DNA of 61,940 bases, the filler included, from Sluysia triapertura (taxonomy: Eukaryota), in NCBI GenBank assembly GCA_046118255.1. It is 5 parts of 5 records of this genome, joined end to end, with 100 filler letters (N's around TTAATTAATTAA, not from the genome) between each part and the next. Parts side by side here need not be neighbours in the genome. Positions count along the whole stretch, not along the records: positions 49,551 to 61,940 come from JBJNIA010113975.1; 4 more parts are not named here. The stretch is one strand, 5' to 3'. The notes below the pieces were generated by a model. That model was not told the origin of the DNA. It worked only from the letters and a program-made list of their open reading frames with translations, and searched no databases. A program made the translations under genes and the position numbers. Positions within the stretch are counted from its first letter, which is position 1; each line of letters opens with the position of its first letter. This document shows, in pieces, positions 49,551 to 61,940 of this stretch.

Positions 49551-49794
49551 ATATATTGTATAATATATTCAAATGTATGTGAAAAAATATAATTTTTAAT
49601 TTTCAATAATTTAAATTTGAAATTAAATAATTCTTTATCATAACCTTTACTCTATTAAAATTACACTCATAAACAAAACAATAAAATTTGACTAATTAAT
49701 TATGCAACACACTAAGTTTAATTATAAAAATTTTTGGATAAAAATAACGAATATAAGCACCTAAAATTTTACATTTAATAAATGACAAACTTAC

Positions 49795-50370
49795 AATTAA
49801 AGATTGGTTACAACTGCTATTTGGTGAAATTATACACAGGTTATTAGATATAAAAGCATTATAATCAGTTTGCTCTGCCATTATTATAGAATCTTCATTT
49901 TTATGATGTGGATTTAAAAGAATCACTGGTAGCACTTCTCTACTATTATCATTATGTTTTCGAACTCTGTAAAATTGATAATCAGCACAATATTGTTCAC
50001 TAAAGGCACTTGAAAAATTTGATAAATTTCTATGTTTATCGGTCTTGTTTGATGTTCCAGGTGAAGAAATAGATGTTGGTAATGTATCATAAGAAATAGA
50101 ATCATAAATACGTTCATTGTTACAGTCAGTATTCGCTTCTTTTTCAATTAACATATTCGTAGTTACTCTACTTTTCAAAGCTTTGATCAATTGTATCATT
50201 ACAGCTTACATTTAGTGATAGTTTACTTTGATTTAACTCAAAGGAATTGAATGTAATTTTCATCGTAATAAATGCACTTATCATCAGATTGACGAAATCG
50301 AGTTTCAGAATTGTAAATAACAAGTTATTGACGAAGCCTAAATTTTTCTTACTGACTACTTTTTGTGTTC
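49795..50370 (-). pseudogene. Exon-like fragment of an unidentified gene, apparently frameshifted
   Basis: Long frame ending at a GTAAGT donor (49794); the frame from the candidate acceptor at ~50370 stops near 50170. Confidence 0.3.
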
Positions 50371-50419
50371 TAATTTAAATTTTATAATGTCTATATATGT
50401 ACAAGTGTTTTAACTTAAA

Positions 50420-52065
50420 AAGACTTAACTTATTCTTGCAAACAAATTCAGTGTGTCTAATTAGACACGATTTAAATATGGACGAAGACGTTCTAATTAG
50501 GATTTAAATCTTACAACAAATCCAAAGCACTTATGAGGTACTTGAAAGAGTTCATATAAATTTAAACGAAATGGCCAAAATATAATAGTTAAATTATATG
50601 AACTTTCTTAACACGTGAAAATGAAATTATCTAAATGAATGTATTTTTATCGATTCACAAATTAAATCAGCCTATTGTGGTCTGACAAATGTTTCAGGAT
50701 TTTACATGTTAAATCAGCCTGTTACGGTATTATATACATATGAATATTTTAATCAAATTTAATAACAGTTAACTTACAACGTAAACTCACTAAAATGTAT
50801 CATAAAATTAACTTATGAATGTGCAACAATCGAATTGAAAAAAATATAAGTAATACACAATTAAGATGATATAATATTGCGAAGTTTTTATCTATGAAAT
50901 GCAAAATGATAATTCTGGAGAAGAGTTCACCTAACAGAGGCGTCTTATATCTTGCCGAAGGCGATCTATTAGGATTTTAAAATGAGTCACTTTAAACTAT
51001 GATTTGCCGCGTAATCTCCAAATTAGATTTGGTAAAAAATCAATCTCGGATATTTTATAATATTTTGAGTTAGCCTTTTTACGGTCTAATTAAATAATGA
51101 GGTATTTTAGGATCTTTAGCTAGCCTTATTACGGTCTAGCAAATAATATTATAATTTAAATATTGAGCTAGCCTCTTACGGTCTAGCGGGGAAAATAATA
51201 TTTTTATTTATTCACAATAATAGGATACAACCTCAAAGTATATTACTAAACAACTAAATTATACAAGATGCTATAAATAACTATTGACAAGAAAAATTTA
51301 TAATATAGATAAGCAATTTACCAACGTAAATCAATATGATTTAGTTGATAAAATTTAAATGTATTTAACTTAGCCGGTTACGGTCTAAGTAAAAGATTAT
51401 TTAGTTTAAGTTGATTTTATATTCTCCCGGTTACAGTGAGAATAACAAAACCTATATAAAATATCTTACTTTCATGGACATTGAGGAATTGACGAAGAAC
51501 AAAGTTTTGATCTAAAATCTAAAAATCTCAATAAAATTTCAACACTTACATGGTGAATTTCTAGTCACCATATTTGTTTTTCTTTTTAATCCAATAAAAC
51601 AAATATATTAATTAATTAATTTAAACAAACATTTAAAATATTTTTATTTTATAATTTTTTAGTAATTTAGTTTTTTACTTAATTTATTTATTCAATTAAA
51701 AATATTAATATTAATATAATAATCTAAAATAAAATTTTATTTAAAATTCAGTCCTAATTCAGTTGTCACAATGTACATAGAATTTTAGTACCTCAAGAAT
51801 AAATCTTAGGTACCAAATTTATGTTTTAGTTTGAGAATAACCTATCTAGTTACGGTCTAGGACAAAAAATTTAGAATTTGAGTGTGATTTTAAAAACCCT
51901 ATCAATTACGATTAAATTGAATAAACTTATACAAAAACTTTACCTATGCATGGAATTGATGATATATTCTATCGGATAACTTGATAAAATAAACTGTGAT
52001 AATAAAACGATTCTTTAAATCCAAATTTTCACTGTCTATTTATATTAATAATCGCCATCTTGTTT
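50420..52065. repeat. Structured dispersed repeat, largest cluster (two long-hairpin modules, about 8 bulged hairpins)
   Basis: Hairpins at 50667, 50714, 51068, 51119, 51167, 51368, 51421, 51841; long hairpins at ~50455-50502 and ~50927-50973. Confidence 0.8.
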
Positions 52066-52559
52066 TTTTATTTAGGAATTGATTTATTCAAACAAATTAA
52101 ATATTTCTCTTTTTATAAAAATTAATTTATATCAAAATTGAATGTCTTATTTTTTATTTTATTAGAATTTTGTTTAATTTTAATTTTAGTATTTATAATA
52201 AAAATAATATTGAAAATTTATAATATAACAGATAAATATATTGTTTTATTATTATATTCACAAGATAAAACAAATTATTAACAATTTTTTTAAACATTAA
52301 TTTCAAAATAAAATGTTTGTCAAATAAAATTGTTAAATTTGATTTTCTAACATTAATTGCGAAAATCCATTAAGTTATTCAATTAAAAATAATTCCATTA
52401 AATACTTATAAGTTCCATAAAATAATGCTACTAGGGAAATATTTTCATTTTTTATTAATGCATTAGTTTAATTGCAATCCATTATCTTAATGACGCTGTT
52501 TATCAATTAATTTGATCACATGTTTTCTATATTTGCATCCGTATCATTAACAATAGGTT

Positions 52560-52960
52560 TAATCTTGATTAGAATTTGCTGCCGCACAAGATAAACCTTG
52601 TAGTGTTTAATCAGCGTTGCGGAGACCAAATGGCATACGAATATACTAAAAGAGTCCAAAAGGTTACTGCTGCCTTCGGTATATCTTCAAGATATAGTGA
52701 AATTTGATGGATGAATTGATGCAAGAAAATATAATGCAACCTGCAAATCTGTGTAAAATGTCACTAGTACCCAGGATTGTGATTTTATTTAACATTCGGT
52801 AGACACCGCATATTTCTTTCTTTTTAACTATTTGCAGATGTGTTGCCCAGGAACGCCGTACAATTCCTTGTTTTTCCACGTTCAGGAATTATTGCTCTGT
52901 TTGTGTCCGAATTTCTTATGATAGTTTGCGACATCGTACATGTATGGTGCTGTCTGTAAA
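52560..52960 (-). mobile_element. Ty3/gypsy reverse transcriptase N-terminal remnant
   Basis: EKQGIVRRSWATHLQIVKKK.ICGVYRMLNKIT..GCIIFSCIN; PFGL..RMPFGLRNA. Confidence 0.85.
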
Positions 52961-53339
52961 TGATCTGTGGAAAATTCTTTCGTTGGTTTGTTGCTGAACT
53001 ACCATTAAATGGGATACCTGTTCTTTTAGGTACACTAGGTTCGTAATACAGGTCTGTTATATATACGTCTACCCGGAATTCGTGATGCTGAAAGAAATAA
53101 TCTCCTATTATTGGATGATATACTGCAGCGGTGATGAAATTCCATTCAAATTCTATCTTGAATTGTTGAGTTTCATAACAAAGTACGGAACATGTAAAGA
53201 TTTGATACTCATGTAAAGGATAGTGATAACGTTCTGAAAAGATTGAAAATAAAACCAACTGAATGTTTATACGTTGAATTTTTAGAACACATTGTAAAAT
53301 AAAGACGGCATTAAACCAAATCCAAAAAACATCGAACAA

Positions 53340-53778
53340 GCAGTCAAATTCTCACAAGTCCCTAATTGTGACAGAAGTTTTTTGAGTGATTTCGCAAAAA
53401 TTACACAACCTTTAAGAAAATTGACTAAGAATGATGTCGAATTTAGATGCACTTTTAAAAGAAATATTTACCACTGCATGAATGTTGATTCTTTCAGACG
53501 TCAGTAAACTTTTTATATTAACCAATGATGTAAATAATTGCTGCATAGGAGCAATTTTAGGACAAAAATATAATAATAATTTAGAAACTGTCACAGCTTA
53601 CGCAAGTCGTCGGCTGATAAAGACGAAATGAATTACTCGACTATAGAAAGAATGCTTTGAAATTGTATGTGCATGCAAAGTATTTAGACGTTATTTGGTG
53701 GAACATTTCAGAAAACTGTCTCAATTTGATTTAGAAATTATATATGAACCAGGAAATCAAAATAACGGAGCTGACTAA
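53340..53778 (+). mobile_element. Ty3/gypsy RT-connection/RNase H remnant
   Basis: DFAKITQPLRKLTKNDVEF; FILTNDVNNCCIGAILGQ; TAYASRRL; LSQFDLEIIYEPGNQNNGAD. Confidence 0.85.
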
Positions 53779-55714
53779 ATGTTAATTTCTGGAAAAGTTG
53801 AAGACCCCAAAGAGAAGACAGGAGACTTCTTTTATTATAGATTCCGTTTTTAAAAGGAGTATTAAATGAAAACCGGCCCCTTCGTATGTTCATAGCAGAC
53901 TTTTAATTATGTAAGATTACCTTCTGAATTGGTCTAATTATTTGGTCTTATTAAGGAAAAAGGTGTTTCTTTTAAACCATAATGTTTTAATTCGCCTCCT
54001 TCTTTGTTCTATTCTACTAGAAAATCTGCATTTTTGGTTGATACACCATCAGGTACAACAGCATCAGATTCAATATGTTCATCGCAAGTGGAGAAAACAA
54101 TGTCGGAATTGAATGGATCACGGACAAAGCAACAATTCGTTGATCTTGATTTTAATATATCTGACTAATAAACATTATTTTATTATTAATTATTAACTAT
54201 TATTTTATTTATAATTCTTTTATTTGAGGAAGTATTTGCAAAAGATACATAAAATTAATTCTAATTATATCAATTCTAATTAATTCTATTTAATGCTAAT
54301 AACTGAAAATTTTAAACAGGAAATAAAATTATTTAATTAATTAATTAAATTAATTTAATTAATGAACTTCGTAAATAAAAATCACTTAAGTAAATATAAA
54401 TATCGAAAAATTCACATAAAAACTGAAGTTTGATAGATTTCGATATCATAATGCTTTTATTTTTAGTATCCAAAGTAAAAATACAAGTTATATCTTTGAC
54501 ACGGATTTTTCAAAAATTTAATTATTTAATTGTTGCATCAAATATACAGAATTTTCAGTTCAACTATATTTTGTAAATTGTAAATAGTTGTAAATGGTGA
54601 TGATGAATTTTGTAAATTAATTGATGAATTTAGTGTTTTTAAAGTTCTGATAAAAGGGTTAATATTAATTTTATTTAATATGGATGACAGAGTAATAACG
54701 AAGTTTTAGAGAGGCGTAAATGGGCCATTTTTATGGATTGCGTGCGGTAGTTAGTTTATAGTATTTCAGTAGAATATGTATCTTAATAGGAGAGGAACGA
54801 TGTAGAAAATATTTTGGGCAGTTTGTGCATTAATTGAATAAGGTAATTATATTGCTAATTGTAATGTTTTATAAAATGTATCTTAAAATTATCTTTATCT
54901 GAAATTGTGTTCCTTTAAAAATAAATAATCTATTATTTTTAAGATTAAACATATAAGAAAATTGTATAAAACTATATTTATTGGTCTTAAGGACCTTAAA
55001 GACATTTAAAACTAGAATAATATTATTAAAATAAAATTGGTCTCATTTATTATATGCACAACATTGTTTAATTATAATAAAAGATATCAAGTACATTCAC
55101 AAATAAAATATTAAGGTTTCCATAAAAATAGATAAAATTATGTACAATGGATAGACGAATAAACCAGACTAAAATGAATGAATTGTTTTTATAAGTACTT
55201 AGCAATAATGATTAATAGAGGATAATTCTACTAATTGAAAGGTATACTTAGGTTCTCTGAGATTGTTTGACGTTATAGAATTGGCACCATTAGTTTTTTT
55301 GTAGGTGCTTTCCATGCACTTGGCAAGAGTTATGCACAAATTCTTAATTTGGTTAATTTATATTCCAATAAACAAAATTTTGCAATAATATGGTAATAAC
55401 ATATTGTTATTGTAATTTTAATTCGTAATATTATTATCAATGTAAAATTGTGCGGATTTTTGAATAATTTCCGTTATTTAATAACGTGTTTTTTATTTTC
55501 TTCATGCATTTCTGTAATATAATGCAATAATTGGGCAAGTTAAAATGTCATTTAGAAAGTTATCAGTCATTTAATATGATGTGCAATGTTTTCTAATGAA
55601 GTTTCGATATATTGAACATGCATGCAATGCATTTTAAGTTAAGTAAAATAGTAAATAGTAAATATAAATACTAAGTATATAAGTTATTCTTACTTATTTT
55701 ATTTATTATTTTAG

Positions 55715-55844
55715 ATGAACTCTACAAAACCTTACATTCGCAAAAAAGCAGTTCTTTTAATGTACAAAGTATTCCTGAAATTTCCTGATGCTTTAAGACC
55801 AGCATTTCCAAGATTAAAAGAAAAATTAGAAGACCCTGATCCAG
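55715..55844 (+). CDS. AP3D1: AP-3 complex subunit delta, internal exon
   Basis: ttttag|MNSTKPYIRKKAVLLMYKVFLKFPDALRPAFPRLKEKLEDPDP(G)|gt. Confidence 0.95.
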
Positions 55845-58800
55845 GTTATCTAAATTGATTGCTTAATGAACAATTTATTTGTAATAAATAGAACAATAGT
55901 AAACTATCAAAAATTTAGTCAGAATGTAATACATTTGTTCCTGACACGATACAAACGTATTTTTATTCTAATAAAAATAGAACTAAATATAAATTTTTCA
56001 ATCAAATTAAGAAGATTCGATCCAATAATATATTCTATGCTGTTTCATGATAATACATCTTAGTTTTTGGTATTTTATTTTGGTTTTCATTTTTTATATT
56101 TCAAGTTAAATTTATATTTATTAAAAGCTGTTTTATTTATGCTTATTTAGTTCTTTAGTCTCATTTAATAGTGATTCAATAATTTTGTTGGAATTTTTCT
56201 CCAAACAGTCCCAAAACAAATTGCTAAGCAATTTGTGAGAGTTTTATTTAATTTTACTTTCCCTAACAAAATAAAACTTGTTAAGCAAGAAATACCTAAA
56301 TCTAAAGGAGAATGTCTAACATCTATAATAATTTTTAAATAATACTAAAAAAGTAATAATGATAATGACAATAAATAACAATGATAATAATAATCATAAT
56401 AATAATAAATGATTACAAAAAATTTATAAACGTATTATTAATGGTTGAAAACACAAAAATTGAATACAGAAAAGATCTTGATAAATTCTTAAAGTGATTT
56501 TAGCCCTCATTAAATCGGGAACAAAAATAATTTGAGTATAATGTATGATTTAATTTAAAGTTAAATCGATTTTAAAACTTGCTAATAATCGTTTTCCATT
56601 TGATTAATTCTTATAAAAATTTCAACAACATTGTAATGATAAATCAAGAATTTGTTATTTCCAGTGTACGAGAGAAATTTTTCTCTCCGATATTGATATT
56701 TTTTGTTAATATTGTTATCTACTGTCTTAACTAGTATATTATTAATTTTATTTTTTGTAATTATTTTTATAAGTAATATTTTCTTATTATATTATTGTTA
56801 TCATTATTATCATTTCAAATCTTTTCCAGGGGTTGTGATGACAACTTAACAATATATTACTTTGTGATTTGACTTTGCTAAATTACACAAAATTATTTAT
56901 TTTCAATTATTATTATAGCTTTATTTATTTTATTTTAACAAATATCTTTTTCCCTTTACTAAGAATGTTGACCTTATTTTGCACTTTTAGTAGTTAATTT
57001 TTAAATCATACTCAGAAAATCAACTTATTACAAGAAGATTTATTAAAGATTTATTCAATTATATTTCATAAGAAAAGAATACAATTAATTAAATATACAT
57101 TTAAATTAAATTAAGTATATGTTTAATTAAATTAAACATGTTAATCCAAATAATAATTCAATTATTAGTCCAAAAGTTATTTAAATTTAAATAACCTATT
57201 AATATTCAAATTTAAAAAATCAAAGTTATAATTAGATGCTAGTGTTACTTGTGATACTAGTAACACTAGTATATTTTCTAAAAATATTATATTATTGTTT
57301 TTGATACAATATTGATAAAGTTTGGTGAAGGATGCATCAAAGTATAGGTGCATAAACATATTAACATCTAGCGGAAGGTCTTTAAAATTAATTATGTAAA
57401 CTTCGTTGAGATTCTTAAAGCATTATAAAAATTATAATGTTATTTAATTCTTTATAGAATTTGAATGCTGTTTTATATTTAATAGAATTCGTTTGTGTTT
57501 GTAGTGGACTCTTATTCTCTAGTAATAATTTGAGTTTTTTTGCTAATATGGATTCTTACTTTTTAATAATTTAAACTTCTTAATAATATTCTCACTTTCT
57601 ACTTGGATTGTGCTTGAAGTATAATGTGAGGTCTAAAATTTTTTAATATAAAAATTGAATTTAAATGTTAATACTAGTACAACTTCTTCAGCTAACGATT
57701 AAATCTTCAAAAATTTATATATACATGTTTATACTTCTTTAATTGATTTACCAAACTTCAAATTCAAAATTTGTGCTATAACTATTAACTTTTTAAACCT
57801 TAAGTTTTATTTTACTTATACAAATCTTCTGGGGGTATAAATTCATACTTGCCCTAGATGTTCAGGATAGAAGTGCTAAATATTCGATTATGTAATCAAA
57901 TTATCAATATTGACCGTTAATATATTCTTATAACTTGTTGTCTTAGCTTAAATATTATTAAGGAAATATGAATTTTATTTAATTTTATTATGTGGGCTCT
58001 ATTGTGAACTCCTTTCTATTTTATATTCAAGAAATAAAAAGAAAAACGAAATTACAGCAAAGATTTATTCAAATTTTAAACGAATATTATTATTAATAAA
58101 ATAATTTATTTCTATTATTTTAATTAACATATAAGTATTACTAAAATGATTAGGATTTTTATTAATTTTGATTTATTTTAAATGACTGGAAATAATTATA
58201 ACCTTTACATTAAATAGCTTCTAATTTTGCAATTATTTGAATAGATATGATATATAATGAATTCCACTGGTTCTATAAATCTTTCACCAATTTAGTCTTT
58301 ATTCTCCTTTTTAATATTAAATAACTTCGAATTTCGGAATTATCAGGACTTATACTAATGATAGTGAATTCCACCGATTCTAGAAATATTGTCTTTTTGT
58401 TATATTTACTCTTATTTATAGTTGTAAATTATATAGCGTTCGTCTTTTTACAGTATTTGTATTTTTAAATCAGTAAATTAATCAGTGGTTGTACAAAATC
58501 ATCAGTTATTATCAAAAGTTATTTATATAGTCTACAAACATTGCAAATAAATTATATAGTTATACAAATCAACAGTTATAATAAATAATAATAAATAGAT
58601 TCTAGTTATTTCCAGTTTATTAATATTTTAAACAACGTTCTTAAATTTTGATTTTATGTTATTCTTATTAAATCTCAATTTAGTATGATTTTATTCGATT
58701 ATAATGTTTTTAAATTTTGATGACATATAATTTTGTCTATTCTATCAAATCTTTAATTTAAATTAATTTTGATCGAGAAAAATGTTATTTATTATTAATT

Positions 58801-59699
58801 ACATAAAAATTCAATTCAATCTAAATTTAGCATAATTTATCGTTTATAATATAAATCATGTTTTTAGGATAATGTTAATAGAGTTTTATGCTCTTAAAGT
58901 TTGATTTCATATTATTATTAATTCCTATTTTAAGATGATTTCTTAACTATAATTTTAATTTCACATTGTCTCTATTGAACCTTACTTTAAAATGATTACT
59001 TATACCAATTTAAATTTGATTGTTATTTGTTACTAAATTTTGATTTTATATTAACTGTATGTAATCTTATTTTAAATTGGTACTAAAGCATTATAATCTT
59101 AATAATTTCTGAGCATTATTCTTTTAAAATTATTTTAAGATGAAAGATTATTTTAAAAATAAGTTTATTTTTAAAATGAATGTTAATAATAAAAATGAGC
59201 ATTATGTTAAAATTCTTTTACAAAATTATATTACTAAACTAAATATTTACATTTAAAATTACAAACAAAATATTTACCGCATTTGTAATAAAATTTACAG
59301 TACCTCAACTCATATGATAACATTTAATATAAAAGGAAGACGGTATTTTCATCACAAATATTAATACTAAATAAAATCCGTTAATTAAATCTAATTTAAT
59401 ATAAAACATTTGGCTAAGTACGATAAACACCTTTCGATAAACAACTATTACCCTGTGGTTTATTATGATTCTTACTATAAAATAATTTACTTCTTATTCT
59501 TTCTAATTGTCTTTAAATTATCCTCTTAAAATTAGAGTCTTTACTCGTCTTTGATATTCTGATATTAAAATTTTCTCCTTTTAATAAATTAAAAGATTGA
59601 ACACAATAAGTTTTATTAACTACGATATGACGTAAAAATACAAAAGAAAATATTAAAATTGACAATAAGAAAGATGTTATAAATTATTAACAGTGTTAA

Positions 59700-60171
59700 C
59701 CCTTTGCGGTCCTATTTTATTTCCATTGAATCCTCCGCAGGTCCTAATTAATTCCAGCGAAAACACAAAATTTTCACAATTAAACGCCTGATTTAAAAAA
59801 CATACTCAAATCGAATTTAAATTATTTATTTATTAATGTAATCGCATTATATTATGTTATATTATACTATATTATATTATGCTTAATTGTAGCAAATTAA
59901 AAAATTTAAATTCTAACTTAGCAATATAATAACACGAATAATCCTATTTGTTTACGATATTACATTTGCACAACTCCGATAAAACTAATCTGCATACTTC
60001 ACATATAGTACTTTGGTAGTATAGTGGTCTGAACCTGACGATAATGAGTGTCGGTGAAAATAAAAATACGAAATGTAAATATTTTCTTATCGGACTATCT
60101 TCGACATGACAGATTACATAAACGTTTCAATGGTAAGCGTCGGAGCAGCCCCAACAGTGGACCGCAGAGGG
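59700..60171. mobile_element. piggyBac-type MITE in an AP3D1 intron
   Basis: TTAA|CCCTTTGCGGTCC ... GGACCGCAGAGGG|TTAA. Confidence 0.9.
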
Positions 60172-60279
60172 TTAAATGTAACAGAAGTTTAAACACTTAT
60201 TTTAGTTTAAATTTTAAAGAAAAATTAATTTATGTTTTATTAAAATTTATCTCTAACGATAATATCTCGATATAATAAT

Positions 60280-60482
60280 ACTTCGTAGTTAATATTTCAC
60301 CAATAACGGCTTCTTAAATAATGGATTGAAACTTTATGGAACGGCCAAAATTCTTTTCGATGAATACCAAATTCGACTGTAATTTTCAAAGTTCTTCGAC
60401 GAATGACACTTCGCAGTTAATATTTCACCAATAACAGATTCTTTTACAATAGACTGAAACTTTGTCGAACGGCCAAAGCTCT
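60280..60482. repeat. ~129-bp-period tandem duplication
   Basis: cttcg.agttaatatttcaccaataac..tgaaacttt..gaacggccaaa occurs twice. Confidence 0.8.
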
Positions 60483-61008
60483 GGAATTATACTGGAATCT
60501 TTAAGTTTCTCCGACAAGTGATTGAGACTTTCTTGGGACAATGCCAAATTTTATTTTCAACGTTTTCAAAAATCTTCGAAATTTCCAAATTTTTCAATAT
60601 AATGATTTCTTTATTTTTTGTGAGAGTTTATTGTGTTTTGGTAGATTCTTTATAATATTCTTTTTCATTAATAATACTGTTCCATGAATAATTTTATTAC
60701 ACTAAAAGTAATGAAATTCCATGTTGTAGATTTCTATCTGTATATGTAAAATTTTATCTTATGTATTTATTTAGTGCTTATGTGTTAACTTTTATTTGTT
60801 TTTTTATTTCTATTTTGATAAAGTATTTTTTCATTTCTACGATGTTCCATTTAATTAGCTAATATTTTCTATTTGGTGGGAATTGTGTTCAGTTGTAATT
60901 TCTTTCTTGACCATCAAAAAGTATATTAACTTAAAAAATATATTTATTGCGTAAATTAAATTCGAATGTATTTAAAAATTATGATTATGTAATTGTCATA
61001 TTTTCTAG

Positions 61009-61148
61009 GAGTTCAGTCTGCAGCAGTTAATGTAATCTGTGAATTGGCTCGTAAAAATCCGAGAAATTATCTATCATTAGCTCCATTATTTTTCAAACTT
61101 ATGAATTCATCAAATAATAATTGGGTGCTCATCAAAATTATTAAATTG
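61009..61148 (+). CDS. AP3D1: AP-3 complex subunit delta, next internal exon (GC donor)
   Basis: ttctag|(G)VQSAAVNVICELARKNPRNYLSLAPLFFKLMNSSNNNWVLIKIIKL|gctagt; phase matches the previous exon. Confidence 0.95.
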
Positions 61149-61174
61149 GCTAGTGCTATTTTTTTTTAATTTAA

Positions 61175-61309
61175 CTCATTACTGGCCGTTGACGTAGTAA
61201 TACGTCATTTTTTGTCCGAAATCCAGTAACCGCTGACGTAGTAGTACGTTTTTTGATAGAATAACTTTGTTTGTGTTGCCATCAAGAATTTTTAACGGCC
61301 AGTTATGAG
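61175..61309. mobile_element. 135-bp TTAA-targeting (piggyBac-like) MITE
   Basis: TTAA|CTCATTACTGGCCGTT ... AACGGCCAGTTATGAG|TTAA. Confidence 0.85.
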
Positions 61310-61847
61310 TTAATTTTACTTTTAAAACACAAATCTTTATATAAATAATAAGTTATGATCGAATATAGTATAATTATTACATTTAAACATGTTTTGTTAG
61401 TTGAACTAACTATGACATTTTATATAATATTACATCCATTTAATATAAACGTGATGATAACATAAATGTGTAAAATTTTTTAGTGCATAACGTGTAAAGA
61501 AAATATTTTTTCATTTCTACGATGCTCCATTAAATCAGCTAATAATATTCACGGTTAAAAGTCATTATCAATAGAAATGAGTTTTAGCATATTAGCATCA
61601 GCATTTTAAAGCAATTGGCCATACAATACAGTCAGATTATCTTTTATGTGCTTTTAAAGTTGCTCATTACATATTATATTGCGTTTAAACAATGCATCCA
61701 ACACCACAATGTATGCCGGAAATTGATCTGGAATGTTTATAGTACTTTTTTTAACTACGAGTTCTTTTATTTCTAGGGTAATTGTACTATAGGATTATAC
61801 TGTCTTAATTAGACATATTAGACATCTCAGATACGATCGATGTAGAG

Positions 61848-61940
61848 CAGGCCTTCTTAAACTATGGATCGCGACCCCAAATGGGGTCGCGTAGCAAAAT
61901 TCTGGGGTCGCGAGAGATTTTAATGTCAAATATTTAAATA
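61848..61940. mobile_element. hAT (Charlie-like) MITE left end, truncated by the window
   Basis: CAGGCCTTCTTAAACT followed by the cgcgacccca..tggggtcgcg palindrome typical of these ends. Confidence 0.6.

What the first reader, a model, noticed from the sequence alone, without database searches (positions are those of the whole stretch)
50667..51861. Periodic arrays of a covarying bulged hairpin in a dispersed element, apparently folding antisense to gypsy pol
Seen: about 14 copies of outer stem-CC-loop(6-7 nt, usually ending TTAC)-GG-bulged pyrimidine-outer stem, at 347, 393, 439, 633, 7629, 27438, 50667, 50714, 51068, 51119, 51167, 51368, 51421 and 51841. Outer stems change sequence but keep pairing: AATCAG/CTGATT, GTCAG/CTGAC, GCTAG/CTAGC, ACTTAG/CTAAGT, CACTAG/CTAGTG, ATTCTC/GAGAAT. 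Neighbours are spaced 46-51 nt with unrelated AT-rich spacers. Non-Watson-Crick pairs at 393, 633, 27438 and 51068 are G-T wobbles on the + strand (A-C on the - strand), and nearby pol remnants are on the - strand. Inference: structure rather than sequence has been selected, as in a protein-binding or processing array (packaging signals, repeat/spacer-like small RNA precursor, or folded ssDNA sites with an extrahelical base). I do not recognise the motif.
Basis: partly seen in the sequence, partly recalled or inferred. Interest (0 to 1): 0.82.

Follow-up and report, generated by a model that had tools for sequence, protein, structure and literature searches.

The report
Bulged hairpin repeats in dispersed element
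A short foldable DNA motif (a bulged hairpin with a loop ending TTAC) is repeated eight times in 1.2 kb of a high-copy, unclassified repeat in an intron of an animal gene; its stems change sequence but keep pairing, so the shape seems to be maintained, but what reads it is unknown.

Summary
All eight copies lie at the stated places, all on the + strand, within 50665-51862. Each has a 4-6 bp outer stem, CC, a 6-7 nt loop (seven of eight end in TTAC), GG, one unpaired T, then the return stem. No such hairpin with a TTAC loop appeared in 300 shuffles. Each left arm pairs with its own right arm far better than with other copies' arms (P about 2e-4; covariation 0.54 against 0.235).

Contigs of one public DNA run show that 49551-53950 is a dispersed repeat with hundreds of copies. 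At the four hairpin positions where most other copies differ from this one, their letters restore the motif in its three degenerate copies. Units are gained, lost and reordered between copies.

The spacers are weakly related, not unrelated. The array is a decayed tandem repeat of 47-53 nt whose core is conserved.

Pol remnants flank the array in both orientations, and wobble pairs show no strand bias.

Nothing matched in Rfam, phage, bacterial or metagenome collections.

Best reading (0.4): a structure-selected recognition site used by the repeat family on single-stranded RNA or DNA. Rivals are a double-stranded binding-site array and palindromes kept by template switching.

The parts
50665..50687 (+). 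Hairpin h1. Four outer pairs (50667-50670 with 50682-50685), CC, a 6-nt loop ending TTGT instead of TTAC, GG, and an unpaired T.
   Evidence: 29.8 bits
50712..50734 (+). Hairpin h2. It has the same 5' arm as h1 and a loop ending TTAC. The 3' arm is lost in this copy; most other genomic copies have C at 50729, which restores the first pair.
   Evidence: 30.8 bits
51068..51091 (+). Hairpin h3. Six outer pairs including one G-T, and a 7-nt loop ending TTAC.
   Evidence: 31.8 bits
51119..51140 (+). Hairpin h4. Five outer pairs and a 7-nt loop ending TATTAC.
   Evidence: 33.9 bits
51167..51187 (+). Hairpin h5. Same arms as h4, with a 6-nt loop.
   Evidence: 30 bits
51368..51390 (+). Hairpin h6. Six Watson-Crick outer pairs whose arms differ from h4 and h5 on both sides.
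   Evidence: -11.3 kcal/mol, z -3.9; 37 bits
51421..51443 (+). Hairpin h7. It shares the core with h6, but four of its six outer pairs are replaced on both sides relative to h6. AG stands for GG in this copy; 43 other contigs have G at 51435.
   Evidence: 29.9 bits
51840..51862 (+). Hairpin h8, degenerate in this copy. The majority letters of other copies (51845 G, 51847 C) give a perfect 5-bp outer stem plus CC/GG.
   Evidence: 30.7 bits
50930..51150 (+). Highest-copy block of the repeat. It comprises a GC-richer leader at about 50930-51060, related to 50466-50510, plus hairpins h3 and h4. Summed contig depth in bin 50951-51150 is about 11,400, against about 18 in the one low-depth bin taken as single-copy (53951-54150).
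   Evidence: tables 2, 3
52551..53180 (-). Neighbour, not shown to be part of the array: a decayed LTR-retroelement pol piece (retropepsin and the N-terminal part of RT, with stops and frameshifts).
   Evidence: translation; query residues 63-113 align to the gag-asp_proteas domain of P0002. The RT part is read by eye only; Pfam found nothing.
53298..53775 (+). Neighbour: a decayed RT C-terminus and RNase H of a Ty3/gypsy-type pol, on the same strand as the hairpins.
   Evidence: (PF17919 E 1.5e-6 and PF17917 E 6.3e-6 on 53482-53628)

Best explanation
The motif is the conserved core of an old, decayed tandem repeat with a unit of about 47-53 nt. That repeat lies inside a high-copy dispersed repeat of unknown class. 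This copy sits in an intron of the host's AP-3 delta gene, next to dead Ty3/gypsy-type pol fragments.

The repeat family keeps the core: CC, a loop ending TTAC, GG and an unpaired T. It also keeps the ability of the flanking 4-6 nt to pair, while the arm sequence itself drifts. This particular copy is inert and has begun to lose hairpins.

The most likely mechanism is inferred, not shown. The hairpin forms on one strand of a single-stranded form of the element, either its transcript or a single-stranded DNA intermediate. A protein reads it through the loop, the two G-C pairs and the bulged T, and needs the outer stem only as a helix. Several copies in the same orientation would raise the avidity of binding.

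Shown: the motif, its clustering, its single orientation, the covariation, the high copy number, the family-level conservation and the tandem-array dynamics.

Inferred: that the structure forms at all, which nucleic acid forms it, and that a protein binds it.
For: - Motif and chance: (0 of 300 shuffles give a TTAC-loop hairpin).
- Conservation profile: core 0.88-0.89, arms 0.44-0.57, spacers 0.40-0.44, random 0.32.
- Pairing kept despite arm divergence: 38 own-partner pairs against 24.4 (P about 2e-4); 84.4% of cells paired and covariation 0.54, with 0 of 500 shuffles reaching either.
- h6 and h7 share an identical 11-nt core, but four of their six outer pairs differ on both sides.
- Family level: 2,319 contigs of one DNA run lie on 49551-55550 at 80% likeness or more. 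The best-supported differences inside hairpins all restore the motif: 50729 A>C, 51435 A>G, 51845 T>G and 51847 T>C. That pattern is expected if master copies are constrained and this copy decays neutrally.
- Joints in other copies skip or repeat single units: 51077 to 51129 skips 51 nt, 51089 joins 51370, and 51388 joins 51103.
- All eight copies share one orientation and an asymmetric core, with the bulge always 3' and TTAC always at the 3' end of the loop.
Against: - There are only eight copies from one locus, and h4 and h5 have identical arms. No tree-aware test such as R-scape was possible.
- The family evidence is a summary table from contigs of a single run, which may be the very sample the window was assembled from. 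Other units of the array could be laid on the wrong unit at 80% likeness.
- The stems are short. Single hairpins fold at -5 to -11 kcal/mol with z-scores of -1.1 to -3.9, and h8 does not fold as it stands.
- There is no RNA evidence, no partner protein, no defined element boundaries and no strand signal from wobbles.
- Template switching can create compensated stems without selection on structure (PMC8794818).
Confidence: 0.4

Rival explanations
1. The array is a set of double-stranded binding sites for a host or element-encoded DNA-binding protein, and acts as an enhancer, insulator or transposase-binding array. The known analogue is the cluster of Su(Hw) sites with AT-rich spacers in the 5' untranslated region of Drosophila gypsy. 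On this reading the palindrome reflects a dimeric binder.
For: - The core is conserved and includes a CpG, and it sits between AT-rich spacers, in clusters of two or three at 47-53 nt spacing.
- The inner positions (AG-CC and GG-T-CT) are nearly invariant in seven of eight copies.
- The array lies next to LTR-retroelement remnants.
- Related short motifs (TCTAATTAG and a 16-bp perfect palindrome at 50453-50468) lie nearby in the same repeat.
Against: - A dimer reading two half-sites predicts conserved arm sequence, not arms that change on both sides. The outer four positions pair 24 times against 13.4 expected (P 2e-4), and h7 has almost wholly different arms.
- The centre is asymmetric and the extra T breaks the dyad.
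- The Su(Hw) consensus itself is absent from the array.
Confidence: 0.2
2. The hairpin potential has no function. The array is a satellite-like tandem repeat whose short palindromes are made and repaired by intra-strand template switching or gene conversion during replication. Core conservation would then reflect recent homogenisation rather than selection.
For: - Other copies show unit gain, loss and reordering, which is typical array turnover (tables 5 and 5c).
- h4 and h5 have identical arms, and so do h1 and h2.
- Template switching is documented to create and maintain perfect stems in one event (PMC8794818).
Against: - Spacers have decayed almost to random (0.40-0.44 against 0.32) while the core stays at 0.88-0.89. 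Homogenisation would carry the spacers along with the core.
- The single-nucleotide bulge and the asymmetric loop are kept in all eight copies. Copying one arm from the other would tend to erase the bulge.
- Family majority letters restore the motif at four separate positions.
Confidence: 0.25
3. The array is a host non-coding RNA or small-RNA precursor processed from the AP-3 delta intron into phased products of about 48 nt.
For: The hairpins are on the same strand as the host gene's exons, so they would be transcribed as part of the pre-mRNA.
Against: - Hundreds of copies are dispersed in the genome, and this copy is decaying at the hairpins.
- The stems, at 6-8 bp, are too short for known Dicer- or Drosha-type precursors (established knowledge).
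- There is no Rfam match.
- No RNA run holds the stretch.
Confidence: 0.05

Closest known systems
Su(Hw) binding-site cluster (insulator) in the 5' untranslated region of Drosophila gypsy (established knowledge)
   Same: Both have many copies of a short conserved motif, separated by AT-rich spacers, in one orientation, inside or beside a Ty3/gypsy-type element.
   Different: The Su(Hw) consensus is absent. Here the motif is a bulged palindrome whose arms covary, which a double-stranded zinc-finger site does not need. Whether the array belongs to the gypsy-type element at all is not shown.
Subterminal imperfect palindromes of IS200/IS605 elements (IS608), read as ssDNA hairpins by the HUH transposase TnpA (PMC3201880, PMC5027513); also bacterial REP sequences read by related TnpA-like enzymes, and IS608's extrahelical T (both from my own knowledge, not checked in a paper)
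   Same: Both are short hairpins read as a structure. Both carry an unpaired T in the stem (own knowledge for IS608). Function is strand-specific. TTAC is the tetranucleotide that IS608 needs.
   Different: In IS608 the TTAC lies in the flank, not in the loop, and there is one hairpin per end rather than clusters. Those are bacterial systems. No HUH gene was seen in this piece. The host here is an animal.
Origin hairpins of CRESS-DNA viruses and the 3' hairpin of Helitrons (rolling-circle Rep enzymes; established knowledge)
   Same: Both have a stem-loop whose loop ends in TTAC (viral nonamer NANTATTAC). In Helitrons the stem sequence varies between families while pairing is kept.
   Different: No hairpin loop here matches NANTATTAC. 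The loops are 6-7 nt. The CTAG lies inside the stem, not 10-12 nt after it. There are eight copies per 1.2 kb, and no Rep or helicase remnant was found.
Integron attC sites (established knowledge; PMC5371416 turned up in a search but was not read)
   Same: Structure is conserved while sequence varies. Extrahelical bases mark the strand that is read. The sites are repeated along an array.
   Different: attC sites are bacterial, 60-140 nt long, read by a tyrosine recombinase, and separated by gene cassettes.
Tandem repeats inside transposable elements that seed satellites, such as the internal repeats of Helentron/DINE-1 elements (the DINE-1 paper PMC2374699 turned up in a search but was not read) and the variable untranslated regions of LTR retrotransposons (both from established knowledge)
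   Same: A short tandem unit sits inside a dispersed repeat, the unit number varies between copies, and the block has very high copy number.
   Different: I know of no described case in which the units share a bulged hairpin with covarying arms. The class of the carrier element is not established here.

Membership tests
Any Rfam RNA family | Match to a curated covariance model | tested here: not met
   In one search the permissive E-value mode over 49551-61940 gave only one chance-level hit (sn2429, E 4.1, at 51951-52023), and it lies outside the hairpins. One search found no tRNA.
CRESS-DNA virus type replication origin | Nonanucleotide NANTATTAC in the loop of the stem-loop | tested here: not met
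   In one search none of the eight matches to the nonamer lies in a hairpin. Only the final TTAC is conserved.
CRESS-DNA virus type replication origin | Adjacent Rep (HUH) gene | tested here: inconclusive
   Two of the five ORFs of 70 aa or more and eleven other stop-free pieces, all within 52519-54165, were scanned against Pfam. The only match was RT_RNaseH. The whole piece was not scanned in six frames.
Helitron 3' end | One hairpin 10-12 nt upstream of a CTRR terminus, inserted between A and T | tested here: not met
   The CTAG or CTAA is part of the stem itself. There are eight hairpins in 1.2 kb. No constant CTRR follows at a fixed distance.
IS200/IS605 and REP/RAYT hairpins | Imperfect palindrome with an extrahelical base | tested here: met
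   An unpaired T follows GG in all eight copies. This is a resemblance of form only.
IS200/IS605 and REP/RAYT hairpins | Y1 HUH transposase (TnpA or RAYT) encoded in or near the element | tested here: inconclusive
   None was seen among the ORFs and pieces scanned. The rest of the genome could not be reached.
Gypsy Su(Hw) insulator | Repeated YRYTGCATAYYY sites | tested here: not met
   One search gave three one-mismatch matches, at chance level (expected 3.0). All three lie outside the hairpins; one, at 50817-50828, falls in the gap between h2 and h3.
Part of a Ty3/gypsy LTR retrotransposon (LTR or untranslated region) | Array lies between, or inside, paired LTRs and is collinear with gag-pol on one strand | tested here: inconclusive
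   There is no long direct repeat pair in the piece. Pol remnants lie on both strands. Depths of the array block and the pol blocks are of the same order, which neither shows nor excludes linkage.
Tandem repeat (minisatellite-like) array | Head-to-tail units with recognisable similarity and variable unit number | tested here: met
   Units 50 nt apart are 76-79% alike over 33-34 nt. Spacers are 0.40-0.44 alike against 0.32 expected. Other copies gain, lose or reorder units. Tandem Repeats Finder itself reports no array here because the units are too diverged.

The most novel reading that the evidence does not exclude
An animal repeat family carries arrays of bulged single-strand hairpins with a TTAC loop. 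These would be recognition or cleavage sites for a structure-reading enzyme or coat protein. It could be a eukaryotic counterpart of the bacterial REP/RAYT or IS200/IS605 hairpin systems, or a multi-hairpin packaging signal of a Ty3/gypsy-type retroelement. In either case the fold, not the sequence, is what is inherited.
Probability: 0.08. Interest if true: 0.85.

Novelty: new variant of a known kind. Interest (0 to 1): 0.45.

Why it matters
Tandem repeats inside mobile elements are common. Units that keep a bulged hairpin through compensated stem changes, while the spacers decay to noise, are not a described feature of animal repeats as far as I know.

If the fold is read by a protein, this would be a compact and testable cis-signal, for packaging, for single-strand processing or for chromatin. 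It would come with hundreds of natural variants in one genome on which to test the rules.

If the pairing is instead kept by template switching, the array is a clean natural example of that mutational process. Either outcome can be decided from the full genome plus simple binding assays.

Tried and rejected
- **Rfam and tRNA scans:** nothing.
- **Tandem Repeats Finder:** no array called at the hairpins.
- **Pattern scans of public collections:**
  - Viral contigs, two-copy pattern: five unrelated tandem repeats in phage-like contigs.
  - Viral contigs, single-hairpin pattern: three lone hits at chance level.
  - Bacterial and archaeal genomes: six unrelated repeats.
  - Metagenome contigs: one eukaryote-like contig, L006, has five tandem units sharing the 11-mer of the 3' half. 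It has no CC...GG hairpin array. The model finds one weak match of 18.9 bits, at the spot my pattern had selected. I treat it as probably unrelated.
- **Protein route to other copies of the element:**
  - ORF 49696-50199(-) and ORF 52824-53339(-) gave no Pfam hit and no word-search homologue, not even themselves. This genome's ORFs are therefore not in that collection.
  - The exhaustive search gave four weak hits, only one of them informative, a retropepsin.
- **Sequencing runs:** only one run holds the stretch. It is kept as contigs and is not on record as RNA (its kind is not recorded), so expression, strand and phased products could not be tested.
- **Full-text search for the 10-mer:** only unrelated primer sequences.
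- **Self-comparison by blastn:** swamped by AT-rich low-complexity matches.
- **Larger units:** aligning the blocks that carry the second recurring motif (ATTGACGAAG at 50288, 50327 and 51488, with related blocks at 50481 and 50954) did not resolve a larger repeat unit.
- **Ideas rejected:** hammerhead or other ribozyme (no Rfam hit); miRNA-like precursor (stems too short); histone or IRE-type hairpins (different loop and bulge side, from established knowledge); intrinsic terminators (the hairpin is followed by A-rich, not T-rich, sequence).

Full report
**What is there**

The piece 49551-61940 is AT-rich animal DNA, with GC mostly 0.17-0.32. Two consecutive exons of an AP-3 delta-type adaptin lie on the + strand at 55715-55846 and 61011-61151. 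They match Pfam Adaptin_N positions 123-166 and 167-214. The finding therefore most likely sits in an intron of that gene, upstream of these exons and on the same strand.

Each has:
- a 4-6 nt arm;
- CC;
- a 6-7 nt loop, which in seven of eight copies ends in TTAC;
- GG;
- one unpaired T;
- the complementary arm.

Five copies fit a strict definition. Three are degenerate in this copy: h2 lacks its 3' arm, h7 has AG for GG, and h8 has CT for CC plus an arm change.

**Is it more than chance?**

Yes.
- The 10-mer spanning the loop end and the 3' arm occurs five times exactly within 800 nt.
- Strict hairpins with a TTAC loop number four on the + strand and none on the - strand. None appeared in 300 dinucleotide-preserving shuffles of the piece.
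- A covariance model built from the eight copies, run with filters off over all 12.4 kb and both strands, recovers only those eight. They score 29.8-37 bits and are all on the + strand. The next hit scores 13.8 bits.

**Is the pairing maintained?**

I anchored the copies on the core and measured mean pairwise identity:

| Region | Identity |
|---|---|
| CC and the TTAC-GG-T block | 0.88-0.89 |
| The two arms | 0.57 and 0.44 |
| 20-nt flanking spacers | 0.40-0.44 |
| Expected from base composition | 0.32 |

The arms have diverged almost as far as the spacers, yet they still pair.
- 38 of 48 arm positions are Watson-Crick with their own partner. When arms are exchanged among copies the mean is 24.4 (P about 2e-4).
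- The outer four positions alone give 24 against 13.4, P 2e-4.
- The tool count gives 84.4% of cells paired against 68.6% in column shuffles. Five of eight pairs change on both sides. The covariation score is 0.54 against 0.235. Neither the paired fraction nor the covariation score was reached in any of 500 shuffles. Sliding the partner by 1-3 columns gives 19-41% paired.
- The clearest case is h6 against h7. They lie 53 nt apart and share an identical 11-nt core, but four of their six outer pairs are replaced on both sides.

Caveats: there are only eight copies, two pairs of copies share arms, and the shuffle control ignores relatedness.

**It is a decayed tandem repeat in a high-copy dispersed element**

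Neighbouring copies are 47-53 nt apart and come in clusters of two or three. Adjacent units are 76-79% alike over 33-34 nt including part of the spacer. A weak A/T-rich motif recurs about 10 nt upstream of the stem. The spacers are therefore degenerate, not unrelated.

One public DNA run holds the stretch. I laid its contigs on 49551-55550 at 80% likeness, and 2,319 contigs lay down. Summed depth is about 18 in the one low-depth bin I take as single-copy (53951-54150). It is 200-1,100 over most of 49551-52350 and about 11,400 in bin 50951-51150, which holds h3 and h4. That implies hundreds of copies.

Three further results:
- **Restoring differences.** The best-supported differences inside hairpins all restore the motif where this copy is degenerate: 50729 A>C (11 contigs), 51435 A>G (43 contigs), 51845 T>G (22) and 51847 T>C (20).
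- **Unit turnover.** Other copies skip one unit (51077 to 51129), join h3 to h6 (51089 to 51370), or join h6 back to the h4 unit (51388 to 51103).
- **Limits.** The run may be the sample the window was assembled from. Contig depth is a poor copy-number measure, and only the best-supported rows are shown.

With those limits, the pattern is that of a repeat family that keeps the hairpins while this inserted copy decays.

**Context and the strand question**

Next to the array lie two dead pol fragments.
- On the - strand, about 53180 down to 52551, there is a retropepsin-like stretch. Residues 63-113 of the ORF align to the gag-asp_proteas domain of a library protein. It is followed by what reads by eye as the N-terminal part of RT. 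Pfam itself found nothing there.
- On the + strand, 53298-53775, there is an RT C-terminus and RNase H. Pfam RT_RNaseH_2 and RT_RNaseH match 53482-53628 with E 1.5e-6 and 6.3e-6.

Pol therefore lies in both orientations, and the claim 'antisense to gypsy pol' cannot be made from this piece. No LTR pair is present, so it is open whether the array belongs to that retroelement.

Wobble pairs give no strand signal. h3 has one G-T on the + strand, and h1 has an A-C on the + strand, which would be a G-T on the - strand. The two private transitions in h8 and h7 split the same way. Single hairpins fold at -5.2 to -11.3 kcal/mol as RNA, with z-scores of -1.1 to -3.9. h8 does not fold as it stands. The 161-nt stretch 51040-51200, which holds h3-h5, is not outstanding on either strand.

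**What it is not**

- It matches no Rfam family and no tRNA.
- The Su(Hw) consensus of the Drosophila gypsy insulator is absent.
- No loop matches the rolling-circle nonamer NANTATTAC.
- The Helitron layout does not fit, because the CTAG lies inside the stem and there are eight hairpins in 1.2 kb.
- Scans of viral, bacterial/archaeal and metagenome collections found only chance or unrelated repeats.

**How it most likely works**

The core is strongly conserved while the spacers have decayed. The arms drift but stay complementary. The bulge and the loop asymmetry are kept in every copy, and all copies point the same way.

The explanation that fits all of these is a structure-specific recognition site. 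It would form on a single-stranded version of the element and be read through the loop, the two G-C pairs and the bulged T. Multiplying it by tandem duplication would raise avidity. I give this 0.4.

- A double-stranded binding-site array (0.2) explains the conserved core and the AT-rich spacing, but not the two-sided arm changes.
- Template switching or conversion without selection on the fold (0.25; PMC8794818) explains compensated stems and array turnover. It does not explain why spacers decay while the core, bulge and loop persist.
- A host small-RNA precursor (0.05) is unlikely for a decaying copy of a repeat present hundreds of times.

The resemblance to single-strand hairpins read by HUH enzymes is only one of form. 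IS608 needs TTAC and recognises subterminal imperfect palindromes as hairpins (PMC5027513, PMC3201880). That the IS608 hairpins carry an unpaired T is from my own knowledge, not checked in a paper. The resemblance is nonetheless the most novel reading the data leave open.

**Verdict**

The strand and 'antisense to pol' claims are not supported. The function is inferred only. The full genome, which I could not reach, would settle the covariation, the strand and the class of the carrier element.

Noticed in passing
window 55715-55846 and 61011-61151 (+): Two consecutive exons of an AP-3 complex delta-type adaptin, matching Pfam Adaptin_N positions 123-166 and 167-214. The whole repeat-rich stretch upstream, including the finding, is probably intronic.
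   Followed up: partly
window 59696-60175: A MITE-like insert of about 480 nt. Its 17-nt terminal inverted repeats are 94% complementary and begin with TTAA-CCC, as in piggyBac-type elements.
   Followed up: partly
window 61168-61316: A second small MITE-like insert of about 145 nt, with 23-nt inverted ends containing TTAA. Inside it are two copies of a short palindrome built on GACGTA...TACGTC.
   Followed up: partly
window 50453-50468, 50492-50503 and 50963-50975: A perfect 16-bp palindrome centred on TAATTA, plus two related TCTA(A)TTAGGA motifs, lie in the high-copy leader blocks of the same repeat. They share GTCTAA with the 3' arm of the hairpins.
   Followed up: no
window 50288, 50327 and 51488 (related blocks at 50481 and 50954): A second recurring motif, ATTGACGAAG, lies on the + strand of the repeat. 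The blocks at 50466-50510 and 50940-50975 are about 80% alike and are among the highest-copy parts, carried by 83-88 contigs.
   Followed up: partly
window 51437-51446 and 51832-51841: The 10-mer TGAGAATAAC, which includes the 3' arm of h7, recurs directly before h8. It brackets about 385 nt that include a very AT-rich stretch. This could be a target-site duplication of a nested insertion, or an array rearrangement. At least one other genomic copy has the same arrangement up to 51640.
   Followed up: no
window 61870-61891: A 22-nt GC-rich perfect palindrome (a 9-bp stem around AAAT) is followed 17 nt later by a second copy of its 3' arm. It looks like the end of another repeat cut by the edge of the piece.
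   Followed up: no
window 60274-60354 and 60402-60482: An 81-nt direct repeat, 83% alike, spaced 128 nt apart, just after the piggyBac-like insert.
   Followed up: no
window 49696-50199 (-): A 167-aa open frame lies in a moderately repeated stretch (about 20 contigs carry majority differences). It has no Pfam match and no homologue in the word-based protein search, so it may not be a gene.
   Followed up: partly
L006 70-180: A eukaryote-like metagenome contig has five tandem units sharing the 11-mer TTACGGTCTAG, but without the CC...GG hairpin. It is probably coincidental.
   Followed up: partly
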